Translations under genes and position numbers: made by a program
Assembly (NCBI GenBank): GCA_946965045.2
Contig: OX337241.1
Coordinates: forward strand, 1,612,001 to 1,676,000
Direction: 5' to 3'
From: Epithemia pelagica
Lineage: Eukaryota; Protista; Bacillariophyta
Length of the DNA: 64,000 nt
Shown here: positions 11,685 to 35,900 of the stretch, piece after piece
How the letters are laid out: every line of letters begins with the position of its first letter
How positions within the stretch are numbered: the stretch's first letter is position 1
The notes under the pieces: generated by a model
Databases searched by the model: none
What the model was told of the DNA's origin: nothing
Seen by the model: the letters and a program-made list of their open reading frames with translations, nothing else

Positions 11685-12386
11685 CCTTACAAAAATTTGC
11701 GTTGTGTTTATGTTTTATGTTATGTTTATGATAAAAACATTTCAGTAAAGACCCATTGTCGGTTTTTGTCATGAATCTGAATCTCAATCAGTTTTCGCAA
11801 CAGAAATGACATCTCTTTCGTGTCAGTGGGAAATTTCTTTCACATGTCGGTTGTTGTCTGTTGTTCAGAATCCCCCGAACTGCGCGCGACAATCGACAAT
11901 ACGAACCTGACAAAAAGAAATGAAATGGTGATGGGTCCCCATCATCCTGTGCTTCGAAGCAGCTACGAGAACATGTTTAATGCTACTCCTATGGAAAGTC
12001 ACGTCATAAGCATGATGAAGCATTCTAATCTTCTTAGCCCCATTCGTCTTCTCATTTATAGATTGTGTATTGGATATTTAAAGAAGTGCTTTTGTTGTCA
12101 TCGATATTGAAAATGAATCAGGCAGCTCTCCGCAACCTACCCATCCACCTCAAGTGTAGAACACCACTGATCCACCGAGTTCCCCGTCTCAGGTATCGTT
12201 CCCATGTGGTGAAGAATATCATACTCTGTCATTTTTTCTTGATCTCTCCCAGTTCTCCAACAACACCAATGTATTTCTAGAGTTATCCCCCCGTTGCACC
12301 ATGACTTCATCTCCCACTGAACCGTTCTTGGTTCGCTTCCACTACACTTGTTTTAGTACATGTGATAATACCCCCACTGGATATCG

Positions 12387-12980: not shown

Positions 12981-13339
12981 CGTCTTCTGACAGCGGACAG
13001 ATCGGTAGAGACCGCAAAAAAGTAAGGTTCTCTACTAATATAAAACAGTAAAGTTCATTTTGCACAACAAGCCCTACCAAAAACAGAAACTATCAAGCTA
13101 CAGGTTGCAACGCGCTAGATTTTTTGGTTCGTGGATGTGACAACTTTAAACTTTACCTTCGCCAAAAAGAATGAGAGTAAATGTCGAATGGTTATCATGA
13201 AGCATGTACGTCTTCTAAAGCGACTTTTTTTCTTGGATGTGTATACAAGAGCTTGAAGCAGATTTCCTCCACACAAGCACATTTTCTAGCTTAGACCAAT
13301 AGAACGAGTGAAAACTCACTCTAATAGTACAAGAAAAAG

Positions 13340-13347
13340 GTGAACAA
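13340..13347. repeat. Left target-site duplication GTGAACAA
   Basis: The identical 8-mer occurs at 20146-20153; each copy directly abuts a TIR. Confidence 0.92.
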
Positions 13348-13886
13348 CAGGGTTGTGAAGCTACTTATTCATATTTCAACTGATCTGACGTAATTTGGTC
13401 ATTAAATTCATATATCATATATTTTTCGAATTAATTCTCCCATTTTTCCTGCCATGAATTATTCTAAGAATTAATTCCTCATATCTCTCGCCATACACAT
13501 ATATTCTATAATGATATTACCCACCATTCTAGTAGGGTAATATCCCCCCACATTCCTCACGACCTCATTGTCTGGCCTCCGTTCTTGACCAAATTAATCC
13601 TCATCCTACGAATATGACATCATTTACTGACATTTGTCAGTTAATAGTGTCATCGCCGCAATCACTGTATTTACCCTTAGTAACTGACGCAAAGATAGAC
13701 ACTGCCCCCCTCTGCGAATCTTATTATTGAAAACAAACAGATGAGAAATGGATCACATGGTCACTGCACCTCCAAAGATTGCGTACCTCTACCTTCAACA
13801 ATCAGCCAAAGTTCCATCGCAGGATCAGACTCACTCTCCCACCGATCCCTGATCACTAGTTGGTGAAGTTATTGACAACAAGAATC

Positions 13887-16800
13887 ATGTCACCTTCGTC
13901 GAAGAAGAAGAAGACTCCTCTTCCAAAGCAATCGGCAGCCGTTTCTGCAAGAAACAAAATCGTTCAGGAGGAGATCGAAGACCAAGTCAATGCCAAACAA
14001 GAATTCATCCTGTCTGAAAAAGAACTTATCCCTGTCCACAAGGGGAAGCCTAACCTCTTATTCTCCAACAGCCCCTCGAAACGTTGGGATTGGGTTCTCC
14101 ATGTTGATTGGCAAGCCCTATTCAAGTGGGTATGGGATGGCACCGTGAAGGATCTTCCAGCCTCTTTTCGAGGCTTTACGAAAATCCATGATATCATGGG
14201 TGAGTTCTTGGGAGAACCACCCGTACAAGACCAAGAATACGATGCCGATGGGAATCCTCTCCCTATTGTTGTTGAAGGAGAACTTTCCAACAAGGAGTAT
14301 AAGGCCAAGTACAAGTTACTCGCTCACCGAATGGTTCTCTGTCCGCTCTGTTTTAAAAACCCCGATGTCCCTTTGTTTAAATGTTGCATTACCTGCAGCG
14401 ATGAGAAGCCATCCAATGTGAAGCAGCACATTGACAAGCATCATGGGGGCGACGAAAAAGTATTTGGAGTGTCAAGTGAAGAGAAGTTGAACCAATCTAC
14501 ACTAAAAGGGTTCACATCCGACCTATCTCCTCGCAAGGAAGCCGTTGGACAATTAAGACAGCTCATATACGAGTTTGTAAATGATTGTTGTCTCCCCGCC
14601 AATACCGTGGAAAAACCCCAGTTCCGGGAACTCCTCCGATATGCTTTTCAAAATGGTGGCCAACTAAAGGACACCCGTGCCGAAGTCATGAGCCGCCGCC
14701 AGGTCACCAAGCTTCGAATGGATTCATACAAGGACTATGTCTCAACTGTTGCCTCTCTAGCAAGGAACGTCCGAGAAGAATACAAGACCCTATGTGGCAA
14801 AGAGATTGCGTTTGCCACGGTCTGCCACGACATTTGGCAGGCGCGACGTCATGATGTCCTTGGGGTCACTCTCATGTTTGCTGACCCACGCAATAGTGTT
14901 GTATATCGAATCCCCATTGGCTTGGCTGAAACTAAGGGCCATGCGGCCGTGGATGTGGCTAACCTAACACACTCCCTACTCATGTCTGTCGGTTTCAATC
15001 AAGACGACCTTGTGGCTTCGGTAAATGACAATACATCAGCTGCTGTCCTTGCCGGTAAATACATTGTCGGAGATCATGCCAAGGTGGGCCGATGCGATAT
15101 GCATCGGGCCGAATTGGTCCTCAAGCACGCCACAGGGCTTGTGCAACGGTTCAGGAAAGGTGTTCTTATCGATTCTTTTCCAGAATTTTGTGAACTGTAT
15201 GGAAAATTCAAGAAACTGGCTGGGTGGGTGACTAGCAAGCACGCATTTCATCGTTGGGAGAAACTCAAGAAGAAGGCCGAAGAACTGGGGTTCACGTTGA
15301 TCTTAATCCCCATGCCAAACGACACCCGTGTTGGTGGATGTGTCATTCTCATCCAAGCTTTACTGCGGAACAAATGGTTTTTTGATCTTTATGTCCTGAC
15401 ATCAAAACTCAGTGACCCTACTTTTGTTTCTCTATATCCTACTCAAGACGAATGGGACCTTCTGGCCCAATATGAAGGTATCCTCAGTCCTCTGAAGGCT
15501 GTTGCTCTACAGCTCCAAACCGACGAACCTGGCGCCAGTTCGGCCACGCTTCTGGAGATTTATCTCTCTCATTTCAAGACTGAACGAATGAGGATGAGCA
15601 AAGTCTCCTGCGTTCCAGTCAACGAGGCGGATCTTGAAGAAGACGAGAAATGGGATGCATCTGCACCCATGAGTGAGTTGAACGCATTGCGAATTGGAGT
15701 GTCTTACAATGAATTGGGTGATGGTCCCAAGAAGCTCATTCGCCGGATTCTGCATGAGTACCGCATCTATCTTTTGGATACAGATGAGGATGCGTTGAAA
15801 GCAGTTTGCTGCAATCCTATGTTGGCGAATATTTATGACGACATGTTCCAGTCTTTGGCCATGTTCGATTCCGAAAAAGTAAGGAAGGCTCGTCGTATTT
15901 TCTTAGACGACATGATGTCCAAGTTCAGCAACGCTAAGGCTTCACCTCTTGGCGCGCTACTTGAAAAACAACGACAGCAATCCCAGGGGGAACCAACTAC
16001 TCCACCCAAAGAGACTACAGCAACTCCCCCTACCAACCCAGGCAACACAGGATCTTCACGAAAGAAGAAGGAACGGTATGAAGAAGAAGATGTTTTTGAG
16101 TCCATACGCAGAACAAGAGAACTCAAAGAACAGGCCCTTCTCCAGATCACTGGAGCGGCCTCTATGGGAGGCACAGAAACAGAGGTTCTGGTGGCATTAA
16201 AAAATGCTTGCACAGAAGCCTTCGATTCCTTTAAACGAATGTGTGGGGTCCATATTGACAAGCAATGGGCCAAGGTCATTGCAGACTATCCAACAGAGAA
16301 ATATTCAAACGAGGCACCAAAATGGAACGAACAGGAGAAGACTGCTTTTCGAAAAGCCTGTTTGAATTCGAATTATTGTCAGATATCAAAGTATTTCGAT
16401 ATCATGGCCTGGTGGAGCGATCACAAGAGAGAATTCCCTCTTATGTATGTGATGGCAATGATATGGCTCACAAAGCCGTCCACCAATGCGTTCCAGGAAC
16501 GCATTTTTTCGTTAGGAACGTGGTTTCAACAGAATAAACTTATGGCGAATATGCTGAAGAAGCATTATGAAATGAGGACAATGGATTTTCTAACCAGGTC
16601 ACTTAAGCGGGAGATTATCGCCAGAGAGTTGGAATTGCAACGAAATACTAAACAACAAATATCACACTACGTTGGAATTGGTAACTCCGAGACGTCTGAT
16701 ACAGTGAACGAGGCAGGCACAACTATGGATTCATCCACAAAGGAGAAAGCGGCCACCAAGGATTTCTCTACAAGACAAACTGCTCTTGTTCAGATGAGTG

Positions 16801-17657
16801 GCATGAGGGATGCAACTCAGAGTTATGTGGAGTACAACAAGAAAGCAGATGCAGAGAAGGGGCTAGTCACAAACGATCAGTCCATTGGTATGACGTACTT
16901 TGAGGAACTTTCTGAGGACGAGGATGAACGCTCTCTCTTGTCTGGTGGATTGGAAACACCTGAAGTTTGTGCTGAAATGAGCAAAGAAAAACGAATTCGT
17001 GAAGCACAACGTCTTTCCCAAATGGTGAGAGATGGAAGAAAGAAACCTATTGAATGGGACACAGTGAAGGTGGTTCGTTTTGAGCGTCACCCAGACGATG
17101 ACTCGGTCCAACATTCATCGGAAGACGAAAGTTTTGGTGACGAAGACAGTGATGCGGCAATGAATGAAGTGTTTGATCTGGAATTGAAAGGATTAGAGGA
17201 AGCTGTAGTACAAGAGGCAATTGACCTGACGGCGTCTCAGACCGAGCAGAGGGATAGTGACAGGGATACATCTGGGAATAAGAGAAAGACAGATGCTCAA
17301 CGTAGAAAGAAAACCAAGCAGCAAAAACTTTTGCCGACTAGACAGTCACCTCCTCGTCAAGCCAAAAACAAAAGCCGTTTGAAGCAGGCATCTATGAAAC
17401 AAACATCTCTGTCCCTGTCAGGTGGACACGAAGAAAGGCAGAAACAATCTCAGTCGAGAAGCCAGGTGAATGCCAAGAAACATGCTAAAGGAAGAAAGGG
17501 ACAACCTAAGGACGACAGGAACTATGAGGATGAACAACAAGATGATACCAAGAACGATCAGAGTATTGAGGATGTCTTACAGGAACTGGAGTCGGACTCG
17601 GAGGATGAAGAACACGGGAATGAAGAACACGATGATGAAGAAGTGTATGACGACTAA
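13887..17657 (+). CDS. hAT transposase (BED-like zinc finger, DDE core, dimerisation domain, long charged tail)
   Basis: CPLC...HIDKHH finger, TVCHDIW (first Asp), CDMH (CxxH), NDTR, and WW...FP...PSTNAFQERIFS (catalytic Glu in the dimerisation domain). The ORF is uninterrupted; first ATG at 13887. Confidence 0.9.
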   Translation: MSPSSKKKKTPLPKQSAAVSARNKIVQEEIEDQVNAKQEFILSEKELIPVHKGKPNLLFSNSPSKRWDWVLHVDWQALFKWVWDGTVKDLPASFRGFTKIHDIMGEFLGEPPVQDQEYDADGNPLPIVVEGELSNKEYKAKYKLLAHRMVLCPLCFKNPDVPLFKCCITCSDEKPSNVKQHIDKHHGGDEKVFGVSSEEKLNQSTLKGFTSDLSPRKEAVGQLRQLIYEFVNDCCLPANTVEKPQFRELLRYAFQNGGQLKDTRAEVMSRRQVTKLRMDSYKDYVSTVASLARNVREEYKTLCGKEIAFATVCHDIWQARRHDVLGVTLMFADPRNSVVYRIPIGLAETKGHAAVDVANLTHSLLMSVGFNQDDLVASVNDNTSAAVLAGKYIVGDHAKVGRCDMHRAELVLKHATGLVQRFRKGVLIDSFPEFCELYGKFKKLAGWVTSKHAFHRWEKLKKKAEELGFTLILIPMPNDTRVGGCVILIQALLRNKWFFDLYVLTSKLSDPTFVSLYPTQDEWDLLAQYEGILSPLKAVALQLQTDEPGASSATLLEIYLSHFKTERMRMSKVSCVPVNEADLEEDEKWDASAPMSELNALRIGVSYNELGDGPKKLIRRILHEYRIYLLDTDEDALKAVCCNPMLANIYDDMFQSLAMFDSEKVRKARRIFLDDMMSKFSNAKASPLGALLEKQRQQSQGEPTTPPKETTATPPTNPGNTGSSRKKKERYEEEDVFESIRRTRELKEQALLQITGAASMGGTETEVLVALKNACTEAFDSFKRMCGVHIDKQWAKVIADYPTEKYSNEAPKWNEQEKTAFRKACLNSNYCQISKYFDIMAWWSDHKREFPLMYVMAMIWLTKPSTNAFQERIFSLGTWFQQNKLMANMLKKHYEMRTMDFLTRSLKREIIARELELQRNTKQQISHYVGIGNSETSDTVNEAGTTMDSSTKEKAATKDFSTRQTALVQMSGMRDATQSYVEYNKKADAEKGLVTNDQSIGMTYFEELSEDEDERSLLSGGLETPEVCAEMSKEKRIREAQRLSQMVRDGRKKPIEWDTVKVVRFERHPDDDSVQHSSEDESFGDEDSDAAMNEVFDLELKGLEEAVVQEAIDLTASQTEQRDSDRDTSGNKRKTDAQRRKKTKQQKLLPTRQSPPRQAKNKSRLKQASMKQTSLSLSGGHEERQKQSQSRSQVNAKKHAKGRKGQPKDDRNYEDEQQDDTKNDQSIEDVLQELESDSEDEEHGNEEHDDEEVYDD

Positions 17658-17810
17658 CATGAAGAGAGGTATAAACGAGAATGAAAACAAAAACGAGCAA
17701 TAGCAGTTGAGCCAAGTGAAGCAAATTGATGATGAGAGATATTGACAGTGAAAACAATTTAATATTAGGAACGTAATACATGTACTGCAGTAAGAATCAA
17801 CTTTCAACAA

Positions 17811-19685
17811 CTAGTACGACTTTCTTTTGTCCATGTACTTGTCAAACATAGAAATGACCTTCTTTTTGAAAAAGGGACAGAAATTTTTGCTCTTTGCAAG
17901 GCGCTCCCGCACCTTGGATCCTTCACCAGATACAGCGATCTGACTCAACGATCCCAATAAAGGGTTGATGTCTCTCCAGAACTTTTGGGGAACCCATGAT
18001 TCCAAATGTTTTGAACACTCATAAGCTTCACATTTCGTGGGTACCCATCCAAGATTTTGGGACCATCGCATCACGTGGATGTCGGAGGGAATTCCTTCGG
18101 ACCGATCAAAGGAAGCTTCGATTACAATGGCAGCAGTCTTGTACCCTATACCGAGCAGAGTGGTAAGCTCCTGGATAGAAATATTCGTCGGAATAACTCC
18201 ATTGTGTTCTTGGATAAAGTAATCCGCGGCATTCACAATGTGTTCAGCATTTTTGTAAAAACGTCCCGGTTCGGAAAGAATGGAGCACAAGGCGTCCATG
18301 CCGTATCTTTGTGAAATGTCAATCACCGCCGTTGCGGATGTCAATCCAAACGAGAAAATACGAGGCATCACAGTGCTAAGTTGTGCATCGGAGGTACTTG
18401 CACTCATGCATATTGTCATGAGGAACATGAAGGCTTTGTCTGCCTGTGGGTCGTCTGCAGTGATAGAAGAGTCGACCCAGTCCTCCCAAGAATCCCGAGG
18501 GACGTTGATGCCATCCTTTTTCAAACTTGTCCAGAAGTTCAGAAGAGAGTAGAACTGAAAAGTTCGTTCAAGCAATATTTCTGGAAATTTGTCACAATCA
18601 GGAATTGATACATGACTGTCACATGGTGGTTTGACGATAGCTTTTTCCCCAGGCATGTGTCTCTTTGTTCCACTTTGCACGTATTTAATGGCTGACTTTG
18701 AGCGTGAAATCGACCCAAGGAATGCCGCTATTTTTTCATTTCGAGATCTCGTTGAGTACGAGTGCAATGCAAATTGATTGTGGAAGAGCTTTTGTTGCTT
18801 TCTGGTAGGAGGAGAGGCAATATCTGTCGTGTCTGATGGAAGATTGGTTGTTGTACTTGTGTCAGTAGAACGTTGTGGAGTTTTGTAGGGGGATGGTAGA
18901 CGGTGGATTGTTTCTTGTGGAGGAGTATATTGTGATGCGGCAGGCAAAATGGTATCAATTTGGGCATGAGCAGAAGACATGTTCAACAATACATGATGTT
19001 CAATCAATGATAGGAAAGGAGATACCGTTGGAGGATTGTATAAATCGGTAGGAAAAGAATCATAGTCCACTGGAATATTTGGAACGTCGATGATATTGAA
19101 GCCCTCCACTCGTTGGGCGCTTGCATGGACACCAATGAGTGGCTTCTTTCGGATCATCCAAGATGTAACAAGAGTGCTGGTTGAAGTTGTCGGTGATATG
19201 GCTAGCTGGTTGTCGATGTAATGAACACAGTCATCCAGTACCTTGTTCCGAATGATTGAAAATTGTGTTTTACAATTTAGAGACAGAATGACCGTCGTAC
19301 AGGTGATGGTCTGATCCACCATGAGAAGTTGTTCTGTGTTGCTTGAAGAAAACCTGTAAGTGTCCTTGTCAGTTTCTTGGAAAATGGCTTGGTATACGAT
19401 ACTCGAAAGCAAATCGAGTTGTTGTTGGAAAGAAAGAGTGGGAATACAACATTTGTGTGTAGGGGGGTCATGAGGAGGACATGAAATCTGACCACCAACG
19501 CGAATGAGCCAGTGAATGGTTTTTTGTTGGATTGCCTGAAAAATCTCGGAAACAGGACGATTCAGGATTCCATCTGTTTCTTTCAAATCAATCAATAGTG
19601 CATAAAGAGAAGGGTTGCAATGCATGACATATTTGGGACAGCATTTTGATTCGAAAATGACATTTGGGTGGGAAGCATCATCCAT
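17811..19685 (-). CDS. Endonuclease III/Nth-like HhH-GPD DNA glycosylase with a ~400-aa N-terminal region of unknown function
   Basis: ICMSASTSDAQL, GRFYKNAEHI, HhH motif ELTTLLGIGYKTA (Lys codon at 18138-18140), GIPSDIHV (Asp codon at 18081-18083) and WRDINPLLG. No C-terminal Fe-S Cys motif. Confidence 0.85.
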   Translation of the reverse strand: MDDASHPNVIFESKCCPKYVMHCNPSLYALLIDLKETDGILNRPVSEIFQAIQQKTIHWLIRVGGQISCPPHDPPTHKCCIPTLSFQQQLDLLSSIVYQAIFQETDKDTYRFSSSNTEQLLMVDQTITCTTVILSLNCKTQFSIIRNKVLDDCVHYIDNQLAISPTTSTSTLVTSWMIRKKPLIGVHASAQRVEGFNIIDVPNIPVDYDSFPTDLYNPPTVSPFLSLIEHHVLLNMSSAHAQIDTILPAASQYTPPQETIHRLPSPYKTPQRSTDTSTTTNLPSDTTDIASPPTRKQQKLFHNQFALHSYSTRSRNEKIAAFLGSISRSKSAIKYVQSGTKRHMPGEKAIVKPPCDSHVSIPDCDKFPEILLERTFQFYSLLNFWTSLKKDGINVPRDSWEDWVDSSITADDPQADKAFMFLMTICMSASTSDAQLSTVMPRIFSFGLTSATAVIDISQRYGMDALCSILSEPGRFYKNAEHIVNAADYFIQEHNGVIPTNISIQELTTLLGIGYKTAAIVIEASFDRSEGIPSDIHVMRWSQNLGWVPTKCEAYECSKHLESWVPQKFWRDINPLLGSLSQIAVSGEGSKVRERLAKSKNFCPFFKKKVISMFDKYMDKRKSY

Positions 19686-20145
19686 GGTGCTCTCTTAAAA
19701 CACAAGGCGATGAGGCACAAGCAGCAACGTGAGTTGTGTGAGTACTATTTTCATCTATTGTGGTGTCAGTCGCGAAACATGTAATGGGTGAAATATTCAG
19801 CGTAGGTAATAATATTACGTAATTTATGGTAATTAATTTATTAAATTAAATTACTGCAAATGAATGAAGGGGTAATTCCGTTGGGTGAATAAATGAGTCA
19901 AATTCATTCTTGAAAGGATTCGCCTCTAATTTATTAAAAAAATTAATTCTCTTTAAAATTTGACAAAGAATATATTACGTAAATGATATTACATGAACTT
20001 GGGAAGGAACAATTTTTGGAAAACGGAATTCATAACGTTTGGTTATTTTGAATATAATGATAAAACTTAATTCTTCATTATTATGTAATGGAATAAATTA
20101 CGTTAATTCTATTCATATAAGAGGTTATGGTAATTCACAACTCTG

Positions 20146-20153
20146 GTGAACAA
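20146..20153. repeat. Right target-site duplication GTGAACAA
   Basis: Immediately follows the right TIR. Confidence 0.92.
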
Positions 20154-20723
20154 AGAGGGAGCAAAAATGTCATGCTTCTGCGATCTGCGACCGAATTCTT
20201 CTTCTTGATCTCTCTACATTCAACATCACAATGACTCATAGAGATAGGTCTAATGAGTAGAATTTTATCGACTATGAGTTGAAGAGTAGGTTCTGTGCAA
20301 GACCGCAGTTTTCGTCGCGGTTTGCGGTCATCGAAGGACACCACACCGTTACCATTGTCATTACGACGTCGGCAGCAGGTGACAGTGAAGCAGGTAAGAA
20401 GTTCTCTGTCCATCGGAAAGCATGCAACCATGTTGTGCTTTCTTTGAAAGCTCTTTTGAGCAAAATGGTGGAAGTGAAAGAGATTTCATGTTTTCTTAGA
20501 GGATGAACGGCGAACGGCGACGTAGACTGCTCCGACTTCGATCTTGTATATCTTCAGCAGCACGGTTGGCACTCGATACAACAGTGTGGGGTGCCGACAT
20601 GGGTTCACGTTATAGTGCTGAGCTGATAACGGGGCTCGGAAAAGAGAGAGTAAAGCTCATTGATGTGTTTCTTTGGTTATTTTTTGAAGCAGAAATTTTC
20701 CTTTTCGTAACACAACCATCACC

Positions 20724-23551
20724 ATGGCACCACTCGGCAGCGGAAAAGAAGGCGACTCGCGCTTCTTCACAACCCAGAAGAAGGGTGAAATGCACGAGCT
20801 GCGCATGGAGTTGCACTCAACGGATCGCGCTGTCAAAGTAGATGCAGTGAAGAAGGTGATTGCCAGTATGACGGTCGGAAAGGACGTGTCCATGTTGTTT
20901 ACCGATGTCTTGAATTGTGTGCAAACGGGAAATATTGAATTGAAAAAGTTGGTTTACCTTTACTTGATCAACTACGCCAAAACACAACCTGAATTGACCT
21001 TGTTGGCGGTCAATACCTTCGTCAAAGATGCCAGTGATGCCAATCCTTTGATCCGTGCGTTGGCCGTTCGGACCATGGGTTGCATTCGTGTCGATCGTAT
21101 CACCGAATATTGTTGCGAACCGCTCAGTCGAGCCATTCGAGATGACGATCCTTATGTCCGTAAGACTGCCGCTGTTTGTGTTGCGAAATTGTATGACATT
21201 GCGCCGGATCTCGTCGTTGAACGTGGATTCTTGGAGATTTTGCACGATTTGATCTCGGACTCCAATCCCAGTGTTGTGGCCAATGGGGTAGCGGCTTTGA
21301 GTGAAATTGCCGAAACGTCAGGAAAGGATGTGATGCGTATCTCTGCTTCTGTGTTGCAGAAACTTTTGGCTGCCCTGAACGAATGTACCGAGTAAGTTTC
21401 TGATGGAAGAAAGGGCAATGACGGGTGTGGTAAAAATCTCATATCTTTCTCGTGTGTTGTTTGTACTCTCCTTTGAAGATGGGGCCAAGTATTTATCTTG
21501 GATTCGTTGGCCAAGTACACACCTGCGGATGGTCGAGAAGCTGAGACTATCATTGAACGTGTAACACCTCGATTGCAGCATGCCAACTCGGCCGTCGTCA
21601 TGTCGGCGGTGAAAGTGATTTTAAGTTACATGGAGCTCATGGGATCGGCCAATAGCGACTCCATTCGTCACTTGACACGAAAGCTAGCACCACCCTTGGT
21701 CACCTTGCTCAACTCGGAGCCAGAAATTCAGTACGTGGCTTTGCGAAACATCAACTTGATTGTACAGAAACGTCCGCATATCTTGGAAAATGAAATCAAA
21801 GTGTTCTTTTGTAAATACAATGATCCCATCTATGTCAAGATGGAGAAGTTGGAGATTATTATTAAATTGGTGTCAGAAAAGAACATTGATCAGGTGCTGT
21901 TGGAATTGAAGGAGTACGCAACCGAAGTTGATGTCGATTTTGTGCGCAAGGCGGTGTCGGCCATTGGTCGTTGTGCTGTTAAACTGGAACGTGCTGCTGA
22001 ACGTTGTATCGGTGTATTGCTTGAACTCATTCAAACAAAGGTCAATTACGTCGTGCAAGAATCTGTCATTGTCATTAAGGACATTTTCCGTCGATATCCC
22101 AATCGTTACGAGTCCATTATTGCTACTCTTTGTGATAACTTGGACACGCTTGATGAACCGCTTGCCAAAGCCAGTATGATTTGGATCATTGGAGAATACG
22201 CCGAACGAATCGATAATGCAGATGAGTTGCTTGATACTTTCTTGGAAACGTTTGAGGAAGAGGACCCTGCTGTACAGTTGCAGCTGTTGACGGCAACTGT
22301 CAAATGTTTTCTGAAAGATCCAGAGGATACACAGGATATGGTAGGTTGAAACAATTGGATAGCCTTTCATGGTGGCACAGATCTGACATCATTTTTCATT
22401 TACAGGTTCAACGTGTCCTAGACATGGCCACAGAAGAATCAGATAATCCGGACTTGCGTGATCGTGGTTTTATCTATTGGCGTCTTTTGTCGACGGATCC
22501 TGAAGCGGCCAAAATGGTGGTTTTGGGTGACAAACCAGTTATTGAAGACGATACGTTCCGTCTCGATCCAGCCCTTCTCAACACTCTCATTTCGCAAATT
22601 GCGACCCTCTCGTCTGTTTACCACAAACCACCGGAAGCATTCGTCGTTCGACGCGGAACCGGCGAAGATAAAGAAGAGGAAGAAGATGACGACGAGGAAG
22701 AGGAATATGATGTGGGCGACTCAGCTGGTGCTGGTGGCGGCGGAGGAGGCGTTGACCTTCTTGATATGGGCGGTATGAGTTTGAATAACAAGGGTGGAGG
22801 GAAAAACGAACCCAAAGCTCCTATGGCTCGTGTTTGTGGACCAGAAAAATCTGGTGGGTTGGAGATCATGGCTGGTTTCCGTCAACTTAAGAAAAAGATT
22901 AGAATGGAGATGCAAGTGACAAATGTTTCGGCGTCACAGGAGATCGCAAGTCTGGCCATTCAGCTCAATAAGAACTCGTTTGGTCTCAATCCAGCAACTC
23001 AGCAATTAATTCTGAACCCTCCTCTCGGACAGGGACATACCGGCACAACACATGTGGAACTGACCACCACACCCAACATGCTGGCACCTATCCCTGCTGG
23101 ACAGCCGGCCTCTCCTCAAGTTCAAGTTGCAATCAAGAATATGCAGTCGGGTAATGTTTTCTATTTTGCTGCCAATTTTAACTTCGAAGCTCTCTTCTCG
23201 CCAGAGGGTACGATGGAACGATCGGCCTTTATTGAATCTTGGAAATCTATTGACGACCGAAACGAATTGTACAGCACAGTCTCTGACTTGCCTCGGGACT
23301 CTGTGGATATTGATGCTGTGACTCAAAAGTTTAAAATGTACCACGTTTTCTTCATCGCGAGGCGTCCAGTACCCAATGCTGAAGGACAAGAAGTTGTCTA
23401 CTTCTCAATGAGAACTTTCACTGGAATGGAGTTCTTGGCCGAGCTCACTTTCAAACAAGGAGTGAATGCATGCAAGGTTTGTCTCAAAACAGAAAACTCT
23501 GCCTATGGCCTCTTGGCCAAGACGGCTCTCGAGAATCTTCTCCGTAACTAA
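20724..23551 (+). CDS. AP-1/AP-2 adaptor complex beta subunit (3 exons)
   Basis: [13 protein letters not shown] and [16 protein letters not shown] motifs. Introns 21392-21478 (ECTE|WGQVFILD) and 22341-22405 (QDM|VQRVL). [16 protein letters not shown] and appendage domains are present. Confidence 0.96.
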
Positions 23552-29939: not shown

Positions 29940-32900
29940 ATGTTGATCCAATGTGGCTTCAATCGTCTTCCCTTCTTTTTCGGGGTGTTGCAACTCGCTT
30001 CAGTTCTCGTCAACGTTCACGCTGATTCCAGCTTGTCCTGTGGCGTCCAATTCTCCTATACAAGTAGTGACTTCGAGTACGTCTGTGTTCCAACGACTAA
30101 GAATCCCACGTTGGCACCTCTTCCAACTCAGGCCCCGATAGCCATCCCAACAACGCCGGCACCGTTTGGTCAACAAAGCAATGGTTCAAATCAGCCCACG
30201 ACGACTAATCAATCGCCCTCACCAACATGGTCTCCTACGGTCACCACACCTCGTCCGTCTGTATTGAATCCACCTAGCCCTGCGACCGCACAACCGACGG
30301 AAATTCCATTCGGTGAGAACGATTTGACATCAAGCCCAACTATTCTTCCCTCCACAGTCCTGCCGAGTCGAAATCCCTCAATTTCTCCGTTGTCTCAGCC
30401 GCCTTCAGAGCAACCAACGTATGTGTCTCCGACGCCAGCGTCTTCGGTCCCAAATGGCACTCCTTTTGGCGAGAACGAGATGACTCTTTCCCCATCCTCT
30501 GTTCCCACCACTGATCCGACAACACGTTCGCCCCATCAACTCACGTCCAATCCATCCATTGAAGAAATTAAGCAGCCTTCTCAGGTCCCAACCGGCAGTC
30601 CTACTGTTGATTCATTTAGTCAATCTGAAATAACGTTACAACCCTCGCAAACTCCTACGCAACAGCTGCCATCTATGCTGACACCGGAGCCTACAAAGTT
30701 TCTCGGCAGCCCTACCGCAGAACCCAATGGTGATCCAACCATACCAGAAATAACATCAAGTCCATCATCACTTCCAACAAAGAACCCAAGCGTTGTCATG
30801 GAAACTTTCGCGCCAGCGGAAACCAGTCAACCAACGCTAAGTTCAACATCGACTCCAACACAAGCACCGACAGCAATGACAGCCCAACCAACGGTCCAGG
30901 CCCAAGTCGAATCCTCCACAAGCCCAAACCAGAGTTCATCAGTCGATATACCCACCCCATCACCGTCTGAACAAGCTCTTTCTTCGTATATGCCAACAAC
31001 ACAACAAACAGGTCAACAGGCCACCAACACGCCGACGGACGCACCCTTTGGACAGAGTGGAGTTACACCCAGTCCAGCAACAGCTACGGCCGACTCACCA
31101 ACAAGTCCTCCGTCGTCTTTTGGAACACCATCACCATCGGCAAACATAGAAGCTGCGACGGAATCACCGTCTTCTCTACAGCAAGGTACCTCGACACCTT
31201 CCACCGATGTACCCACATTTGCTCCAACCACAGTAGCCAATGTAGAAACAGACCAACCAACAATACCAGGCCAGACGGACTCCCCAAGTTCTGGTACGAC
31301 GCCAACTTCTGCGACACCAGGAAGTCCTACGCCTACGGTCACTCCTAGTATTCAAGATGAACCGACATTCCGGCCATCGTCACTAGCAACAAATCATGAA
31401 GCTTCTGATGAGCCGACGGACGCACCCTTTGGACAGAGTGGCGTTACGTCCGGTCCAGCAACAGATACGGCCGACTCACCAACAAGTCCTCCGTCGTCTT
31501 TTGGAACACCATCACCATCGGCAAACATAGAAGCTGCGACGGAATCACCGTCTTCTCTACAGCAAGGTACCTCGACACCTTCCACCGATGTACCCACATT
31601 TGCTCCAACCACAGTAGCCAATGTAGAAACAGACCAACCAACAATACCAGGCCAGACGGACTCCCCAAGTTCTGGTACGACGCCAACTTCTGCGACACCA
31701 GGAAGTCCTACGCCTACGGTCACTCCTAGTATTCAAGATGAACCGACATTCCGGCCATCGTCACTAGCAACAAATCAAGAAGCTTCTGATGAGCCGACGG
31801 ACGCACCCTTTGGACAGAGTGGCGTTACGTCGGGTCCAACAACAGATACGGCCGACTCACCAACAAGTCCTCCGTCGTCTTTTGGAACACCATCACCATC
31901 GGCAAACATAGAAGCTGCGACGGAATCACCGTCTTCTCTACAACAAGGTACCTCGACACCTTCCACCGATGTACCCACATTTGCTCCAACAACAGTAGCC
32001 AATGTAGAAACAGACCAACCAACAATACCAGGCCAGACGGACTCCCCAAGTTCTGGTACGACGCCAACTTCTGCGACACCAGGAAGTCCTACGCCTACGG
32101 TCACTCCTAGTATTCAAGATGAACCGACATTCCGGCCATCGTCACTAGCAACAAATCAAGAAGCTTCTGATGAGCCGACGGACGCACCCTTTGGACAGAG
32201 TGGCGTTACGTCGGGTCCAACAACAGATACGGCCGACTCACCAACAAGTCCTCCGTCGTCTTTTGGAACACCATCACCATCGGCAATCGTAGAACCTGCG
32301 ACGGAATCACCGTCTTCTCTACAACAAGGTACCTCGACACCTTCTATCGATGTACCCACATTTGCACCAACGCCGGAGGCGAATCGTGAGACAAATCAAC
32401 CGTCAATTATTGGGGGGACGGAAGCCCCAATTGCTGCCACAACGCCAACGTCTAAAACATCTGACAGTCCTACAGTCGCCACCAGCAGTCAGGATGATCG
32501 AACTGCCTTGCCGACATCACTAGGAACAAATCAAGAAGCTACCGGCCAACCAACGACTCCTCCAATTGGTCAAAGCCAAATTTCCCCGGCCCCAACAACA
32601 GATGCTACGAATCCTCCGTCATCGATTGGAACCACTATACCGACTAGCGCGCCGCCTTCTGATTTCCCAACATTTCAAGGAACAAATCAAGGGGCTACTG
32701 GCCAACCAACGAATCCTCCATTTGGTCAAAGCGAAACGTCCTCTGTGCCAACAACAGATACTTCTTCTGACTCACCAACAAGTCCTCCATCATCGAACGG
32801 AACTACTACACCCACAAGCGTGTCAACCACCACCTTCCCAACGTCACCGGCAACAAATAATCAGCAAGCTACGGTTCAACCAACGGACACCTCTTTTGGA

Positions 32901-35900
32901 GAAAACGAAATAACAGCAGTACCAACTGCAGATGTTGCTGCTTTACCAACAAGTCCTCCAAGTTCGGTTGGAACAACAACACCCACAAGCGTGTTAACCA
33001 CCTTCCCAACATCACCAGCAACAAGGGTGACGCCCACTGGCGTCCCGACATCACAAGGAACCAATAAGGAAACTTCCCTTCAACCAGCGCAAGCTCCTTT
33101 TGCACAAAACGGAATGACGCAAGAACCAACAACAGACACACCTGGATCCGGAACTAGTGCTCCATCGGCTGTGCCGTCATCTGCATCAACCAAGGTCCGA
33201 ACCGAGTCACCTTCTTCGTTAGTAGAAGGTACAAACAGACCATCGTCCAAAGCGACAACAATTGCACCAACAACTGGAATAAATGGTGGAACAAGTCAAC
33301 CCTCTATTCCTGGACAGACAACATCACCTAGCGACGATACAACACCAACATCCACATCTGATGGCTCTCCTACAATCGCTCCGAACGCCCAGAGTCAATT
33401 AAGCGCCGGGCCAACTATACAAGACACAACAGAGGAAAATACCCCAGTTCCATCGACAAATACGATCGGCCCACCCACAAGTGGTCCATGGGTTGCTGAA
33501 ACAAATTCACCTGCAATAACCACAACATCCTCGCCATCTTCAATCGAACAAGGTACAAACGCACCATCGAGAGAAATTACAACATCATCCCCCACCATTG
33601 ATGGGACTGTCGTAACAAGTCCACCCTCGACTTTTCGTCAGACTGGATCTCCAGGTGACACATCAAACACTGATAGTCCAACATTCGCTCCAAACAAGCA
33701 AGATGCGCCAAGCGCTTTACCAACAATACCGAGGACAGGTCAGGAGGCAACCGGCCAACCCACCGAAGCACCATTTGGACAAAGCGGAAATACTCCAGTT
33801 CCAACTACAGATACACCTGGCTCACCCACAAGTGCTCCATCCTTCGCTGGAACATCATCGCCTTCTTCAATCGAACCCGGTACAAACACACCATCGCGAG
33901 AAATTACAACATCGTCCCCCAGCATTGAAGCAACAGTGGTACCTACTCAGCCCTCAACTTTTCGTCAGACTGGATCCCCAAGTGGCACAGCAAACACTGA
34001 TAGTCCAACAATCGCCCCAAACAAGCAAGATGCTCCGAGTGCTTTACCAACAACTCCGAGGACAGGTCAGGAGGCAACCAGCCAACCCACCGAAGCGCCA
34101 TTTGGACAAAGCGGAAATACCCCAGTTCCAACAACAGATCCAGTTGTCTCACCCACAAGTGCTCCATCCTTCGCTGGAACATCATCGCCTTCTTCAATCG
34201 AACCCGGTACAAACACACCATCGAGAGAAATTACAACATCGTCCCCCAGCATTGAAGCAACAGTGGTAACTACTCAGCCCTCAACTTTTCGTCAGACTGG
34301 ATCCCCAAGTGGCACAGCAAACACTGATAGTCCAACAATCGCCCCAAACAAGCAAGATGCTCCCAGCGCTTTACCAACAAAAACGGGGACAGGTCAGGAG
34401 GCAACCGGCCAACCCACCGAAGCACCATTTGGACAAAGCGGAAATACTCCAGTTCCAACTACAGATACACCTGGCTCACCCACAAGTGCTCCATCGTTCG
34501 CTGGAACATCATCGCCTTCTTCAATCGAACCCGGTACAAACACACCATCGAGAGAAATTACAACATCGTCCCCCAGCATTGAAGCAACAGTGGTACCTAC
34601 TCAGCCCTCAACTTTTCGTCAGACTGGATCCCCAAGTGGCACAGCAAACACTGATAGTCCAACAATCGCCCCAAACAAGCAAGATGCTCCGAGTGCTTTA
34701 CCAACAACTCCGAGGACAGGTCAGGAGGCAACCGGCCAACCCACCGAAGCGCCATTTGGACAAAGCGGAAATACCCCAGTTTCAACAACACATCCAGTTG
34801 TCTCACCCACAAGTGCTCCATCCTTCGCTGGAACATCATCGCCTTCTTCAATCGAACCCGGTACAAACACACCATCGAGAGAAATTACAACATCGTCCCC
34901 CAGCATTGAAGCAACAGTGGTAACTACTCAGCCCTCAACTTTTCGTCAGACTGGATCCCCAAGTGGCACAGCAAACACTGATAGTCCAACAATCGCCCCA
35001 AACAAGCAAGATGCTCCCAGCGCTTTACCAACAAAAACGGGGACAGGTCAGGAGGCAACCGGCCAACCCACCGAAGCGCCATTTGGACAAAGCGGAAATA
35101 CCCCAGTTCCAACTACAGATCCAGTTGTCTCACCCACAAGTGCTCCATCCTTCGCTGGAACATCATCGCCTTCTTCAATCGAACCCAGTACAAACACACC
35201 ATCGAGAGAAATTACAACATCGTCCCCCAGCATTGAAGCAACAGTGGTAACTATTCAGCCCTCAACTTTTCGTCAGACTGGATCCCCAAGTGGCACAGCA
35301 AACACTGATAGTCCAACAATCGCCCCAAACAAGCAAGATGCTCCCAGCGCTTTACCAACAAAAACGGGGACAGGTCAGGAGGCAACCGGCCAACCCACCG
35401 AAGCACCATTTGGACAAAGCGGAAATACTCCAGTTCCAACTACAGATACACCTGGCTCACCCACAAGTGCTCCATCGTTCGCTGGAACATCATCGCCTTC
35501 TTCAATCGAACCTGGCACAAACACACCATCGAGAGAAATTACAACATCGTCCCCCAGCATTGAAGCAACAGTGGTACCTACTCAGCCCTCAACTTTTCGT
35601 CAGACTGGATCCCCAAGTGGCACAGCAAACACTGATAGTCCAACAATCGCCCCAAACAAGCAAGATGCTCCGAGTGCTTTACCAACAACTCCGAGGACAG
35701 GTCAGGAGGCAACCGGCCAACCCACCGAAGCGCCATTTGGACAAAGCGGAAATACCCCAGTTCCAACAACAGATCCAGTTGTCTCACCCACAAGTGCTCC
35801 ATCCTTCGCTGGAACATCATCGCCTTCTTCAATCGAACCCGGTACAAACACACCATCGAGAGAAATTACAACATCGTCCCCCAGCATTGAAGCAACAGTG

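What the first reader, a model, noticed from the sequence alone, without database searches (positions are those of the whole stretch)
13348..20145. Intact hAT transposon carrying its own Endonuclease III-like DNA glycosylase
Seen: TIRs and a perfect 8-bp TSD enclose exactly two intact, intronless, convergent ORFs (stops about 150 bp apart): a transposase and a 624-aa HhH-GPD glycosylase retaining the catalytic Lys and Asp. Established: hAT elements normally encode only a transposase; HhH-GPD enzymes excise modified bases, and the plant DME/ROS1 members erase 5mC; diatom transposons are cytosine-methylated; some other transposons carry anti-silencing or base-modifying genes (VANC in VANDAL, TET/JBP in fungal KDZ elements). 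I know of no described hAT-glycosylase pairing, but could not search. Inference: the cargo may (a) remove 5mC or its deamination products to keep the element active, (b) process the hairpin or abasic intermediates left by hAT excision, or (c) be a captured passenger.
Basis: partly seen in the sequence, partly recalled or inferred. Interest (0 to 1): 0.92.

Follow-up and report, generated by a model that had tools for sequence, protein, structure and literature searches.

The report
Diatom hAT transposon with own glycosylase
A recently active cut-and-paste (hAT) transposon in a pennate diatom carries, besides its transposase, a long-conserved gene for an endonuclease III-type DNA base-excision enzyme. 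I found no paper describing this pairing, and the enzyme may let the element edit bases in its own DNA, for instance to escape methylation silencing.

Summary
Window 13348-20145 is a complete 6,798-bp hAT element. It has 12-nt terminal inverted repeats (11/12 matching) and a perfect 8-bp target duplication, GTGAACAA. It holds a 1,256-aa transposase and, convergent with it, a 624-aa endonuclease III/NTH1-like glycosylase that keeps the catalytic Lys516 and Asp535.

An empty-site allele in the sequencing runs shows that both genes lie inside the mobile unit. It also shows that the insertion is heterozygous. About six near-identical haploid copies exist.

The cargo is not a one-off capture. All 11 family copies for which I had DNA pair the glycosylase with a convergent hAT transposase. 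Two of them come from a sediment metagenome. Seven elements have perfect target duplications. The two gene trees agree, the glycosylase is under purifying selection, and the family forms one clan apart from cellular NTH proteins.

The protein lacks the Fe-S cluster and carries an internally duplicated N-terminal domain with no fold match. RNA contigs cover the glycosylase gene weakly and do not cover the transposase.

Function is untested. I favour counter-silencing or base editing of the element's own DNA. I found no published description. The scan had already found this family on other DNA of this genome.

The parts
13340..13347 (.). Left copy of the 8-bp target-site duplication, GTGAACAA
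   Evidence: The empty allele carries a single copy.
13348..13359 (+). Left terminal inverted repeat, CAGGGTTGTGAA
   Evidence: The same CAGGGTnnnGAA ends occur in L002, L003 and L005-L010.
13360..13886 (+). Left subterminal region: AT-rich, with GAATTAAT-type short repeats. Presumed transposase-binding sites and transposase promoter.
   Evidence: AATTAAT and GAATTAA occur 7-9 times in the terminal 400 bp of both ends and 0 times in the interior. The binding and promoter roles are inferred.
13887..17657 (+). hAT transposase gene: 1,256 aa from the ATG (the mechanical ORF starts at TTG 13860). It has a BED-like C152/C155/H181/H186 motif, candidate DDE residues D315 (14829-14831), D381 (15027-15029) and E871 (16497-16499), an hATC dimerisation region at about aa 830-880, and a long charged, non-conserved tail.
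17658..17810 (.). 153-bp spacer between the two convergent stop codons
17811..19685 (-). Glycosylase gene, 624 aa plus stop
18951..19685 (-). Glycosylase N-terminal domain (aa 1-245): an internally duplicated alpha/beta module (W59-LIR and W176-MIR) with no fold match found
18765..18950 (-). Predicted disordered Ser/Thr/Pro-rich linker (aa 246-307)
   Evidence: pLDDT below 50.
17814..18758 (-). Endonuclease III/NTH1-type HhH-GPD catalytic region (aa 310-624), with Lys516 at 18138-18140 and Asp535 at 18081-18083. A helical tail takes the place of the Fe-S cluster loop.
19686..20133 (-). Right subterminal region: AT-rich (GC 0.34-0.38), with TTAATTC-type repeats. Presumed glycosylase promoter and transposase-binding sites.
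   Evidence: The roles are inferred.
20134..20145 (-). Right terminal inverted repeat. It reads CAGAGTTGTGAA on the - strand, one mismatch to the left repeat.
   Evidence: Contigs of other copies diverge exactly after 20145.
20146..20153 (.). Right copy of the target-site duplication, GTGAACAA

Best explanation
Window 13348-20145 is one recently inserted, heterozygous copy of an autonomous hAT-superfamily transposon family of a raphid pennate diatom. Every member of this family carries two genes transcribed towards each other from the two ends.

The first gene is a BED/DDE/hATC transposase. The second is a glycosylase made of an internally duplicated N-terminal domain with no fold match, a disordered linker, and an endonuclease III/NTH1-type HhH-GPD catalytic domain. 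That domain keeps the Schiff-base lysine and the catalytic aspartate but has lost the [4Fe-4S] cluster.

Shown here: the element is a single mobile unit, and the glycosylase was acquired once and has co-diverged with the transposase under purifying selection.

Inferred: the enzyme is an active bifunctional glycosylase/AP-lyase that works for the element. Most probably it excises a modified base from the element's own DNA and so counteracts methylation-based silencing. Candidate substrates are 5-methylcytosine or an oxidised or deaminated derivative. The fast-evolving N-terminal domain would supply lineage-specific targeting, either to the subterminal repeats or to the transposase. Host base-excision repair would then restore an unmodified base.

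My confidence in the structural and evolutionary part is about 0.95. My confidence in the counter-silencing function is about 0.35-0.4. The confidence figure given is for the whole statement, function included.
For: Mobile unit:
- TIR plus TSD.
- An empty-site contig with one SNP, at haploid depth 68 against flank depth 155.
- Element depth of about 466, roughly six haploid copies, and other junction sequences that start exactly at 20145.

Family:
- 11 of 11 loci pair the glycosylase with a convergent hAT transposase.
- Seven elements have perfect 8-bp TSDs and 11-12/12 TIRs of the form CAGGGTnnnGAA.
- TSDs fit nTnnnnAn at T2 in 6/7 and at A7 in 6/7.
- Subterminal repeats are lineage-specific.

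Co-inheritance:
- The starred clades of the glycosylase and transposase trees agree.
- Mantel r is 0.89, p 1e-4.
- The family forms one clan against 48 NTH-like representatives, with support 99/91 and 100% of bootstrap trees.

Selection:
- dN/dS is 0.19 for window against L001.
- pS is saturated and pN is 0.24-0.46 in the other diverged pairs (the near-identical L005/L006 excepted).
- K516 and D535 are kept in all members that cover them.

Fold:
- The family profile matches NTHL1 at E 1.4e-19.
- The AF2 model has pLDDT 85.5, and Foldseek matches NTHL1 at 1.3e-7.

Expression:
- Run X4 is RNA: it alone shows a GT..AG intron joint in the neighbouring gene.
- It holds contigs only inside the glycosylase ORF.

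Analogy for function:
- Fungal DNA transposons, including hAT7, carry TET/JBP dioxygenases (PMC12730594).
- VANDAL elements encode VANC (PMC5735166).
- Spm TnpA anti-silencing needs the host ROS1-family glycosylases (bioRxiv 10.64898/2026.08.24.746577).
- DML-type 5mC glycosylases are reported only from plants and green algae (PMC9861306), so a diatom element could not borrow one from its host.
Against: - No biochemical or methylation data exist for this protein or this species.
- NTH-type enzymes are known for oxidised pyrimidines, not 5mC.
- The protein is nearer to NTH1 than to anything else solved, and no DME/ROS1 chain appeared in the PDB sequence search.
- It lacks the Fe-S cluster that ROS1 needs.
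- CpG observed/expected in the elements (0.64-0.90) is somewhat lower than in their flanks (0.85-1.06). This fits a history of methylation and deamination and does not fit full protection.
- The RNA evidence is low-depth contigs without strand information.
- Among the near-identical copies, 4 of 5 glycosylase SNPs are non-synonymous. The sample is too small to interpret, but it gives no sign of strong constraint on very recent copies.
Confidence: 0.42

Rival explanations
1. Transposition-coupled repair. The glycosylase/AP-lyase helps the element's own cut-and-paste cycle. It could clean or nick DNA at the excision site or at the 8-bp staggered integration gaps. It could also create single-strand breaks that channel donor-site repair towards copying from the sister chromatid or homologue, which would raise copy number.
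For: The gene is strictly linked and co-diverges with the transposase. It keeps lyase chemistry through K516. The divergent N-terminal domain could be a lineage-specific partner of the transposase.
Against: From established knowledge of Hermes and Ac, hAT chemistry makes flank hairpins and 3'-OH transposon ends. No step needs base excision, and thousands of hAT families manage without such a gene. RNA contigs show the glycosylase without detectable transposase, which does not suggest obligate co-expression.
Confidence: 0.17
2. Mutational shield. The enzyme repairs deaminated or oxidised bases preferentially in element DNA (T:G or U:G from 5mC or C deamination, 5hmU, thymine glycol). This would slow the decay that methylated or heavily transcribed transposons suffer. 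It would not remove the silencing mark itself.
For: The catalytic domain is closest to NTH1, whose known substrates are damaged pyrimidines. The family has long-lived lineages with intact ORFs.
Against: The elements still show mild CpG depletion relative to their flanks. The host presumably already has NTH1, UDG and similar enzymes, so an element-specific benefit needs targeting that has not been shown.
Confidence: 0.15
3. Another element-serving role that uses DNA binding more than catalysis, or that acts on the host. Examples are a regulator of transposition, a factor that marks or damages target DNA to bias integration, or an enzyme for a different modified base such as a 6mA-related or hypermodified base.
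For: The large conserved N-terminal domain has no fold match. Its weak partial resemblances are to winged-helix/HTH DNA-binding domains.
Against: The strict invariance of the catalytic Lys and Asp and of the HhH-GPD core across 30-35% identical lineages argues that catalysis is selected.
Confidence: 0.18
4. Neutral passenger. A host NTH gene fragment was captured by one hAT copy and is carried along without function.
For: DNA transposons do capture host sequence (general knowledge).
Against: The gene is present and intact in 11 of 11 copies spanning lineages with saturated synonymous divergence. dN/dS is about 0.2 and the catalytic residues are invariant. It has a single origin far from any cellular NTH. 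It is also present in a different sample's metagenome with the same architecture.
Confidence: 0.02

Closest known systems
hAT-superfamily DNA transposons (Ac, hobo, Tam3, Hermes)
   Same: 8-bp TSD, short CAG...CTG TIRs, subterminal short repeats, a transposase with an hATC dimerisation domain (Pfam PF05699) and a Hermes-like SERxFS-type motif (QERIFS here), nTnnnnAn-like targets, and cut-and-paste polymorphism with a clean empty site.
   Different: It carries a second, conserved gene for a DNA glycosylase. The transposase is unusually long (about 1,250 aa), with a charged, non-conserved C-terminal tail.
TET/JBP-dioxygenase-carrying DNA transposons of fungi (KDZ, hAT7, IS3EU, Harbinger and others; PMC12730594)
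   Same: Cut-and-paste transposons, including a hAT lineage, that carry a base-modifying enzyme acting on cytosine methylation. That cargo is proposed to counter silencing.
   Different: The enzyme class differs: a base-excision glycosylase/lyase instead of a dioxygenase. The host is a diatom instead of a fungus. Here the cargo co-diverges with one transposase lineage, whereas the fungal TET genes moved repeatedly between superfamilies.
Endonuclease III / NTH1 (E. coli Nth, human NTHL1)
   Same: HhH-GPD fold with the catalytic Lys and Asp. These are the best sequence and fold matches (E 1.4e-19 and 1.3e-7).
   Different: There is no [4Fe-4S] cluster (0 of 32 family members have the Cys motif). 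From my own knowledge, yeast Ntg1 is an NTH homologue without the cluster; the clusterless MutYX structure 8uuc appeared. The protein also has about 300 extra N-terminal residues forming an internally duplicated domain, and it is encoded inside a transposon.
Plant DME/ROS1 5-methylcytosine glycosylases
   Same: Bifunctional enzymes of the HhH-GPD superfamily with catalytic Lys and Asp, large non-catalytic extensions, and a role in opposing transposon methylation. This is the functional model I favour.
   Different: Those are host genes that need an Fe-S cluster and have a split glycosylase domain plus a conserved C-terminal domain. The diatom protein showed no specific similarity to them, and its 5mC activity is untested.
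VANC of VANDAL (Mutator-like) elements, and Spm TnpA
   Same: Transposon-encoded accessory proteins that cause sequence-specific loss of methylation on their own family. TnpA does so by way of the host ROS1-family glycosylases (bioRxiv 10.64898/2026.08.24.746577; PMC5735166).
   Different: Those proteins are non-enzymatic recruiters. Here the element would encode the excision enzyme itself.

Membership tests
hAT superfamily transposon | 8-bp target-site duplication | tested here: met
   GTGAACAA lies on both sides. The empty allele has one copy. Six further elements have perfect 8-bp TSDs.
hAT superfamily transposon | Short terminal inverted repeats starting CAG/TAG | tested here: met
   CAGGGTTGTGAA against CAGAGTTGTGAA, 11/12. 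The motif CAGGGTnnnGAA is shared by nine elements.
hAT superfamily transposon | Transposase with the C-terminal hAT dimerisation domain | tested here: met
   Pfam PF05699 at 30 bits against a cut-off of 21.4. The transposase profile matches Hermes at E 1e-5 over the same region, including the QERxFS motif.
hAT superfamily transposon | DDE catalytic triad in an RNase H-like core | tested here: inconclusive
   D315 (CHDIW), D381 (NDNT) and E871 are invariant in 17 transposases. E871 aligns with the Hermes SERTFS glutamate. D315 aligns with the Hermes DLW only in a non-significant stretch. D381 is assigned by position only, and no structure was predicted.
hAT superfamily transposon | Target preference nTnnnnAn (my own knowledge of hAT elements) | tested here: met
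   Of 7 TSDs, T is at position 2 in 6 and A at position 7 in 6. Five fit both positions.
hAT superfamily transposon | Mobility | tested here: met
   The insertion is heterozygous with an intact empty site. There are about six near-identical haploid copies, and other junctions start at the TIR end.
Endonuclease III / NTH1 (HhH-GPD superfamily) | HhH-GPD fold | tested here: met
   The family profile matches NTHL1 at E 1.4e-19. The AF2 model matches 7rdt by Foldseek at E 1.3e-7, TM 0.70 by target. The single sequence is just under Pfam's cut-off, at 21.6-24.2 against 26.2 bits.
Endonuclease III / NTH1 (HhH-GPD superfamily) | Catalytic Lys (lyase) and Asp after the hairpin | tested here: met
   K516 and D535 align with the NTHL1 residues. 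They are kept in all 28-29 family members that cover the columns.
Endonuclease III / NTH1 (HhH-GPD superfamily) | C-terminal [4Fe-4S] cluster (C-x6-C-x2-C-x5-C) | tested here: not met
   The motif is present in 0 of 32 family members against 28 of 48 NTH-like representatives. The tail is helical in the model.
Endonuclease III / NTH1 (HhH-GPD superfamily) | Excision of oxidised pyrimidines with AP-lyase activity | not testable with these tools
   This needs an enzyme assay.
DME/ROS1 5mC DNA glycosylases | Fe-S cluster, split glycosylase domain and conserved C-terminal domain | tested here: not met
   There is no Fe-S motif. The catalytic domain is continuous and closest to NTH1. No DME/ROS1 chain appeared among the PDB sequence hits at E up to 1. 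The C-terminal domain was not compared directly because I held no ROS1 sequence.
DME/ROS1 5mC DNA glycosylases | 5-methylcytosine excision | not testable with these tools
   This needs an enzyme assay or a methylome.
Transposons with base-modifying or anti-silencing cargo (TET/JBP+ elements, VANDAL) | The accessory gene lies inside the TIRs and is conserved with the element | tested here: met
   Empty site, 11 of 11 loci, congruent trees, dN/dS 0.19.
Transposons with base-modifying or anti-silencing cargo (TET/JBP+ elements, VANDAL) | The cargo reduces silencing of its own family | not testable with these tools
   No methylation or functional data are available. Only weak RNA presence of the cargo gene was seen.

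The most novel reading that the evidence does not exclude
The cargo is a transposon-encoded active DNA demethylase. It would be a clusterless NTH-derived glycosylase that excises 5-methylcytosine, or another epigenetic base, specifically from its own element family, guided by a new tandem-repeat N-terminal targeting domain. That would be the first 5mC-type glycosylase outside the plant lineage, evolved independently of DME/ROS1 inside a selfish element.
Probability: 0.3. Interest if true: 0.92.

Novelty: new variant of a known kind. Interest (0 to 1): 0.78.

Why it matters
Cut-and-paste transposons are usually thought to encode one protein. The few known exceptions (VANC, TET/JBP cargo) have been informative about the arms race between transposons and epigenetic silencing.

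This case is a hAT family that has kept a base-excision enzyme through deep diversification and is still jumping. It would be the first transposon found to bring its own DNA glycosylase.

If the enzyme removes methylcytosine or a related mark, three things follow. It would show convergent invention of glycosylase-based demethylation outside plants. It would give diatoms, where no active demethylase is known, a candidate one. And it would offer a compact, Fe-S-free glycosylase with a separable targeting domain for study.

The family is directly testable, because intact, near-identical, polymorphic copies and a cultured organism exist.

Tried and rejected
- The N-terminal domain gave no acceptable match in Foldseek against the PDB (best E 0.9), AFDB clusters (best E 0.14), VIA-align wide (best Z 5.7, below the noise level the tool states) or ESM Atlas shapes (TM at most 0.32). 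Only weak partial resemblances to winged-helix/HTH domains appeared, and I do not rely on them.
- Pfam found nothing in glycosylase residues 1-380 or in the transposase tail.
- The search for related loci on metagenome contigs with the family alignment returned no confirmed locus.
- The Atlas search with a neighbouring adaptin fragment did not identify the host taxon. The MnmE search did.
- TSDs could not be confirmed for the two sediment-metagenome contigs. Their flanks do not match each other or form duplications, probably because the assembler joined different copies. The right end of L001 and the right end of the second element in L008 were not found.
- CpG depletion was computed as a proxy for methylation history and is too weak to decide anything.
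- The syn/nonsyn ratio among near-identical copies rests on 13 sites and is not interpretable.
- Six literature searches found no paper describing a glycosylase inside a hAT or any eukaryotic DNA transposon. Repbase Reports and subscription journals are not covered.
- Passenger capture and 'not mobile' were considered and rejected (see the rival explanations).
Full report
**1. The observation**

The mechanical ORF list shows two long open frames between 13.3 and 20.2 kb. One is 13860-17657 on the + strand: 1,265 aa from a TTG, or 1,256 aa from the first ATG at 13887, which is the form held in the public protein collection (P0005). The other is 17811-19685 on the - strand, 624 aa. The two converge, and their stop codons are 153 bp apart.

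The sequence at the ends reads ...AAAAAG GTGAACAA | CAGGGTTGTGAAGC... on the left and ...TTCACAACTCTG | GTGAACAA AGAGG... on the right. This gives a 12-nt inverted repeat with one mismatch and a perfect 8-bp direct duplication.

I scanned every start in 13000-13860 against every end in 19685-20700 and required a perfect 8-bp duplication. This pair scored 11/12 and the next best 8/12. By my own estimate, about 13 pairs would have a chance duplication. The chance that any one of them also has at least 11/12 complementary ends is about 2e-6.

Pfam places ORF1 in Dimer_Tnp_hAT at 30 bits, above the cut-off. It places ORF2 weakly in HhH-GPD at 21.6-24.2 bits, against a cut-off of 26.2.

**2. Direct proof of the mobile unit**

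Three DNA-like runs of the same organism (X1-X3) hold the element. Word depth is about 466 inside it and about 155 in the right flank.

At position 20145 the contigs fork. One 76-nt contig (depth 68 in X1, 50 in X2) carries 46 letters that are not element sequence, followed by 20145 onward. Those letters match window 13309-13338 with a single substitution. This contig is therefore the empty allele: left flank, one GTGAACAA, right flank.

Other contigs leave the element at exactly 20145/20146 into unrelated sequence, at depths of 62-71. These are other insertion sites of near-identical copies.

The flank depth is about twice that of each junction. The insertion is therefore heterozygous in a diploid, and roughly six haploid copies exist. 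They differ at 13 listed sites in the 5.7 kb of the element that was laid. No internal deletion joints were reported, and one 6,040-nt contig spans both genes. The family has been transposing very recently, and both genes lie inside what moves.

**3. The cargo is a fixed part of a diversified family**

A word-indexed search with the glycosylase found three relatives at 58, 41 and 32% identity. A full HMMER scan with their profile found 41 representatives at E below 1e-30. Ordinary NTH proteins begin only at about 100 bits, against 1,096 bits for the protein itself.

I fetched DNA for ten further copies:
- Eight are from the same assembly (L001-L003, L007-L010, and a second element in L008).
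- Two are from a sediment metagenome of another study (L005, L006).

In all of them the glycosylase is followed by a convergent hAT transposase. One further short contig without DNA shows the same gene order.

Six of these elements have perfect 8-bp duplications, each different from the others, and 11-12/12 inverted repeats of the form CAGGGTnnnGAA. The two metagenome copies share the ends CAGGGTTATGAA and CAGGGTTACGAA and diverge from each other exactly outside them.

Of the seven duplications, six have T at position 2 and six have A at position 7. From my own knowledge, this is the classical hAT target pattern.

Each lineage has its own short subterminal repeat, concentrated in the terminal 400 bp of both ends and nearly absent inside:
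- GAATTAA / AATTAAT, 7-9 times, in the window copy.
- AAAGTCA, 21 times, in L009.
- AACTTAA, 14 times, in L005.

This is what co-evolving transposase-binding sites look like.

**4. Co-divergence, selection and origin**

Maximum-likelihood trees of the 11 glycosylases and the 11 transposases share all strongly supported clades: ((window, L001), L002), (L003, L007) with L008 and L009, and (L005, L006). Only the long-branched L010 moves, and without strong support. Pairwise distances correlate with r = 0.89 (Mantel p 1e-4).

Between the window copy and L001, the glycosylase has dN/dS of about 0.19, with dS already at about 1.5. In the more distant pairs examined (window-L002, L003-L007, L008-L009), synonymous sites are saturated while pN is 0.36-0.46, similar to the transposase.

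The catalytic domain is the most conserved part. K516, D535 and the surrounding HhH-GPD motifs are invariant.

On a tree of the catalytic domain, the 29 family representatives form one clan against 48 NTH-like representatives, with support 99/91 and in 100% of bootstrap trees. This is consistent with a single acquisition.

The nearest outsiders that carry names are 'endonuclease III homolog' proteins of unrelated eukaryotes: Pneumocystis, Vitrella and a labyrinthulid. The gene is therefore not a recent copy of the host's NTH1.

**5. What the proteins are**

The glycosylase family profile matches human NTHL1 at E 1.4e-19 and bacterial endonuclease III at about 1e-12. The alignment puts K516 and D535 on the catalytic Lys and Asp.

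An AlphaFold model built on 80 aligned sequences has mean pLDDT 85.5. It shows a folded N-terminal domain (aa 1-245), a disordered linker (246-307) and the HhH-GPD domain. Foldseek's best solved matches are NTHL1 and endonuclease III.

The Fe-S cysteine motif is absent in all 32 family members and present in 28 of 48 NTH-like sequences. Helices replace it.

The N-terminal domain, modelled alone at pLDDT 88, has no acceptable match in any library. It consists of two homologous halves (hhalign probability 96.8%, E 2e-10), each with a C-x-P-x-[YF] strand and a W-[LM]-I-R helix. It diverges much faster than the catalytic domain.

The transposase has invariant C152/C155/H181/H186 (BED-like), D315, D381 and E871. 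Its profile matches the Hermes dimerisation/catalytic-Glu region at E 1e-5.

**6. Host and expression**

A neighbouring single-exon MnmE gene is 63% identical to that of Epithemia clementina. It is about 50% identical to those of Fistulifera, Nitzschia, Phaeodactylum, Seminavis and Cylindrotheca. The host is therefore a raphid pennate diatom.

Run X4 is RNA. It alone shows an 87-nt GT..AG joint (21391 to 21479) in the adjacent beta-adaptin gene. It also shows gene-to-gene depth swings and adapter tails.

In X4 the only element sequence is a set of five contigs at depth 2-5, all at 99% identity or more, covering 18264-18908 and 19179-19645. All of it lies inside the glycosylase ORF. Nothing covers the transposase, the spacer or the subterminal regions (word shares 0.53 for the gene against 0.14 for the whole element).

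The glycosylase is thus transcribed at a low level. Contigs carry no strand, and absence of the transposase from contigs is not proof of silence.

**7. Mechanism**

Shown: this is a mobile two-gene hAT unit with a single-origin glycosylase that is co-inherited, under selection and catalytically equipped.

Inferred: the enzyme is active and serves the element. I favour counter-silencing by excision of 5mC or a derivative from the element's own DNA, at about 0.35-0.4. My reasons are:
- hAT chemistry needs no base excision.
- A generic repair enzyme gives no element-specific benefit.
- Other DNA transposons carry enzymes or factors aimed at cytosine methylation (PMC12730594, PMC5735166).
- Spm's anti-silencing works through the host ROS1-type glycosylases (bioRxiv 10.64898/2026.08.24.746577).
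- DML glycosylases are reported only from the plant lineage (PMC9861306), so a diatom element would have to bring its own.

The fast-evolving N-terminal domain is a natural candidate for lineage-specific targeting.

Against this reading:
- NTH enzymes are not known to excise 5mC.
- The protein lacks ROS1's hallmarks.
- The elements show mild CpG depletion.
- No methylation data exist.

The rivals are help with transposition-linked repair, a shield against deamination or oxidation, and other roles. They are listed with their tests in the rival explanations.

**8. Novelty**

Six full-text searches found no description of a glycosylase carried by a hAT or any other eukaryotic DNA transposon. The nearest published parallel is the fungal TET/JBP cargo.

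Within this scan the family had already been reported from other copies in the same genome (s1-242205, s1-242207, s1-242203, s1-226339, s1-232827). The atypical architecture of this very gene had also been noted (s1-257156). My tests were run independently and agree with those notes.

I file it as a new variant of a known kind: a hAT transposon with accessory cargo, where the cargo class and its N-terminal domain are new.

Noticed in passing
window 21392-21478: An 87-nt GT..AG intron of the beta-adaptin gene just right of the element is confirmed by RNA contigs. The adaptin transcript contig starts at about 20364, so the element sits about 220 bp upstream of an actively transcribed host gene.
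   Followed up: partly
L003:9935-13687: In this copy, which has a perfect TIR and TSD, the transposase is split into three called ORFs (gap 12014-12147, overlap at 13013-13035). The glycosylase ORF is intact. I did not resolve whether these are frame breaks or introns.
   Followed up: no
L008:301-7466 and L008:7467-14392: Two family elements of different lineages lie side by side. The left one starts with CAGGGTTGTGAAGT at 301, and its right end was not found. It may have been cut by, or abut, the insertion of the second element.
   Followed up: partly
L001:13488-14400: This copy is the closest relative of the window element. It has a transposase truncated at the N-terminus and no recognisable TIR on that side. 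A short telomere-like AACCCTAACCCTA lies about 800 bp beyond.
   Followed up: no
window 29940-39224: A 3,094-aa ORF contains a repeat with a 369-bp period. The same 12-mer recurs at 37366, 37735 and 38104. This looks like a giant repetitive protein gene.
   Followed up: no
window 13348-20145 and elements in L002-L010: CpG observed/expected is 0.64-0.80 in the seven elements of this genome, against 0.85-1.06 in their flanks and 1.19 in a neighbouring copia fragment (L009:15231-17782). This is a mild, unexplained depletion.
   Followed up: partly
window 20094-20174 (run X2): At least three different right-hand junctions of near-identical copies appear at roughly haploid depth. This suggests that several insertions of this subfamily are heterozygous in the sequenced culture.
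   Followed up: partly
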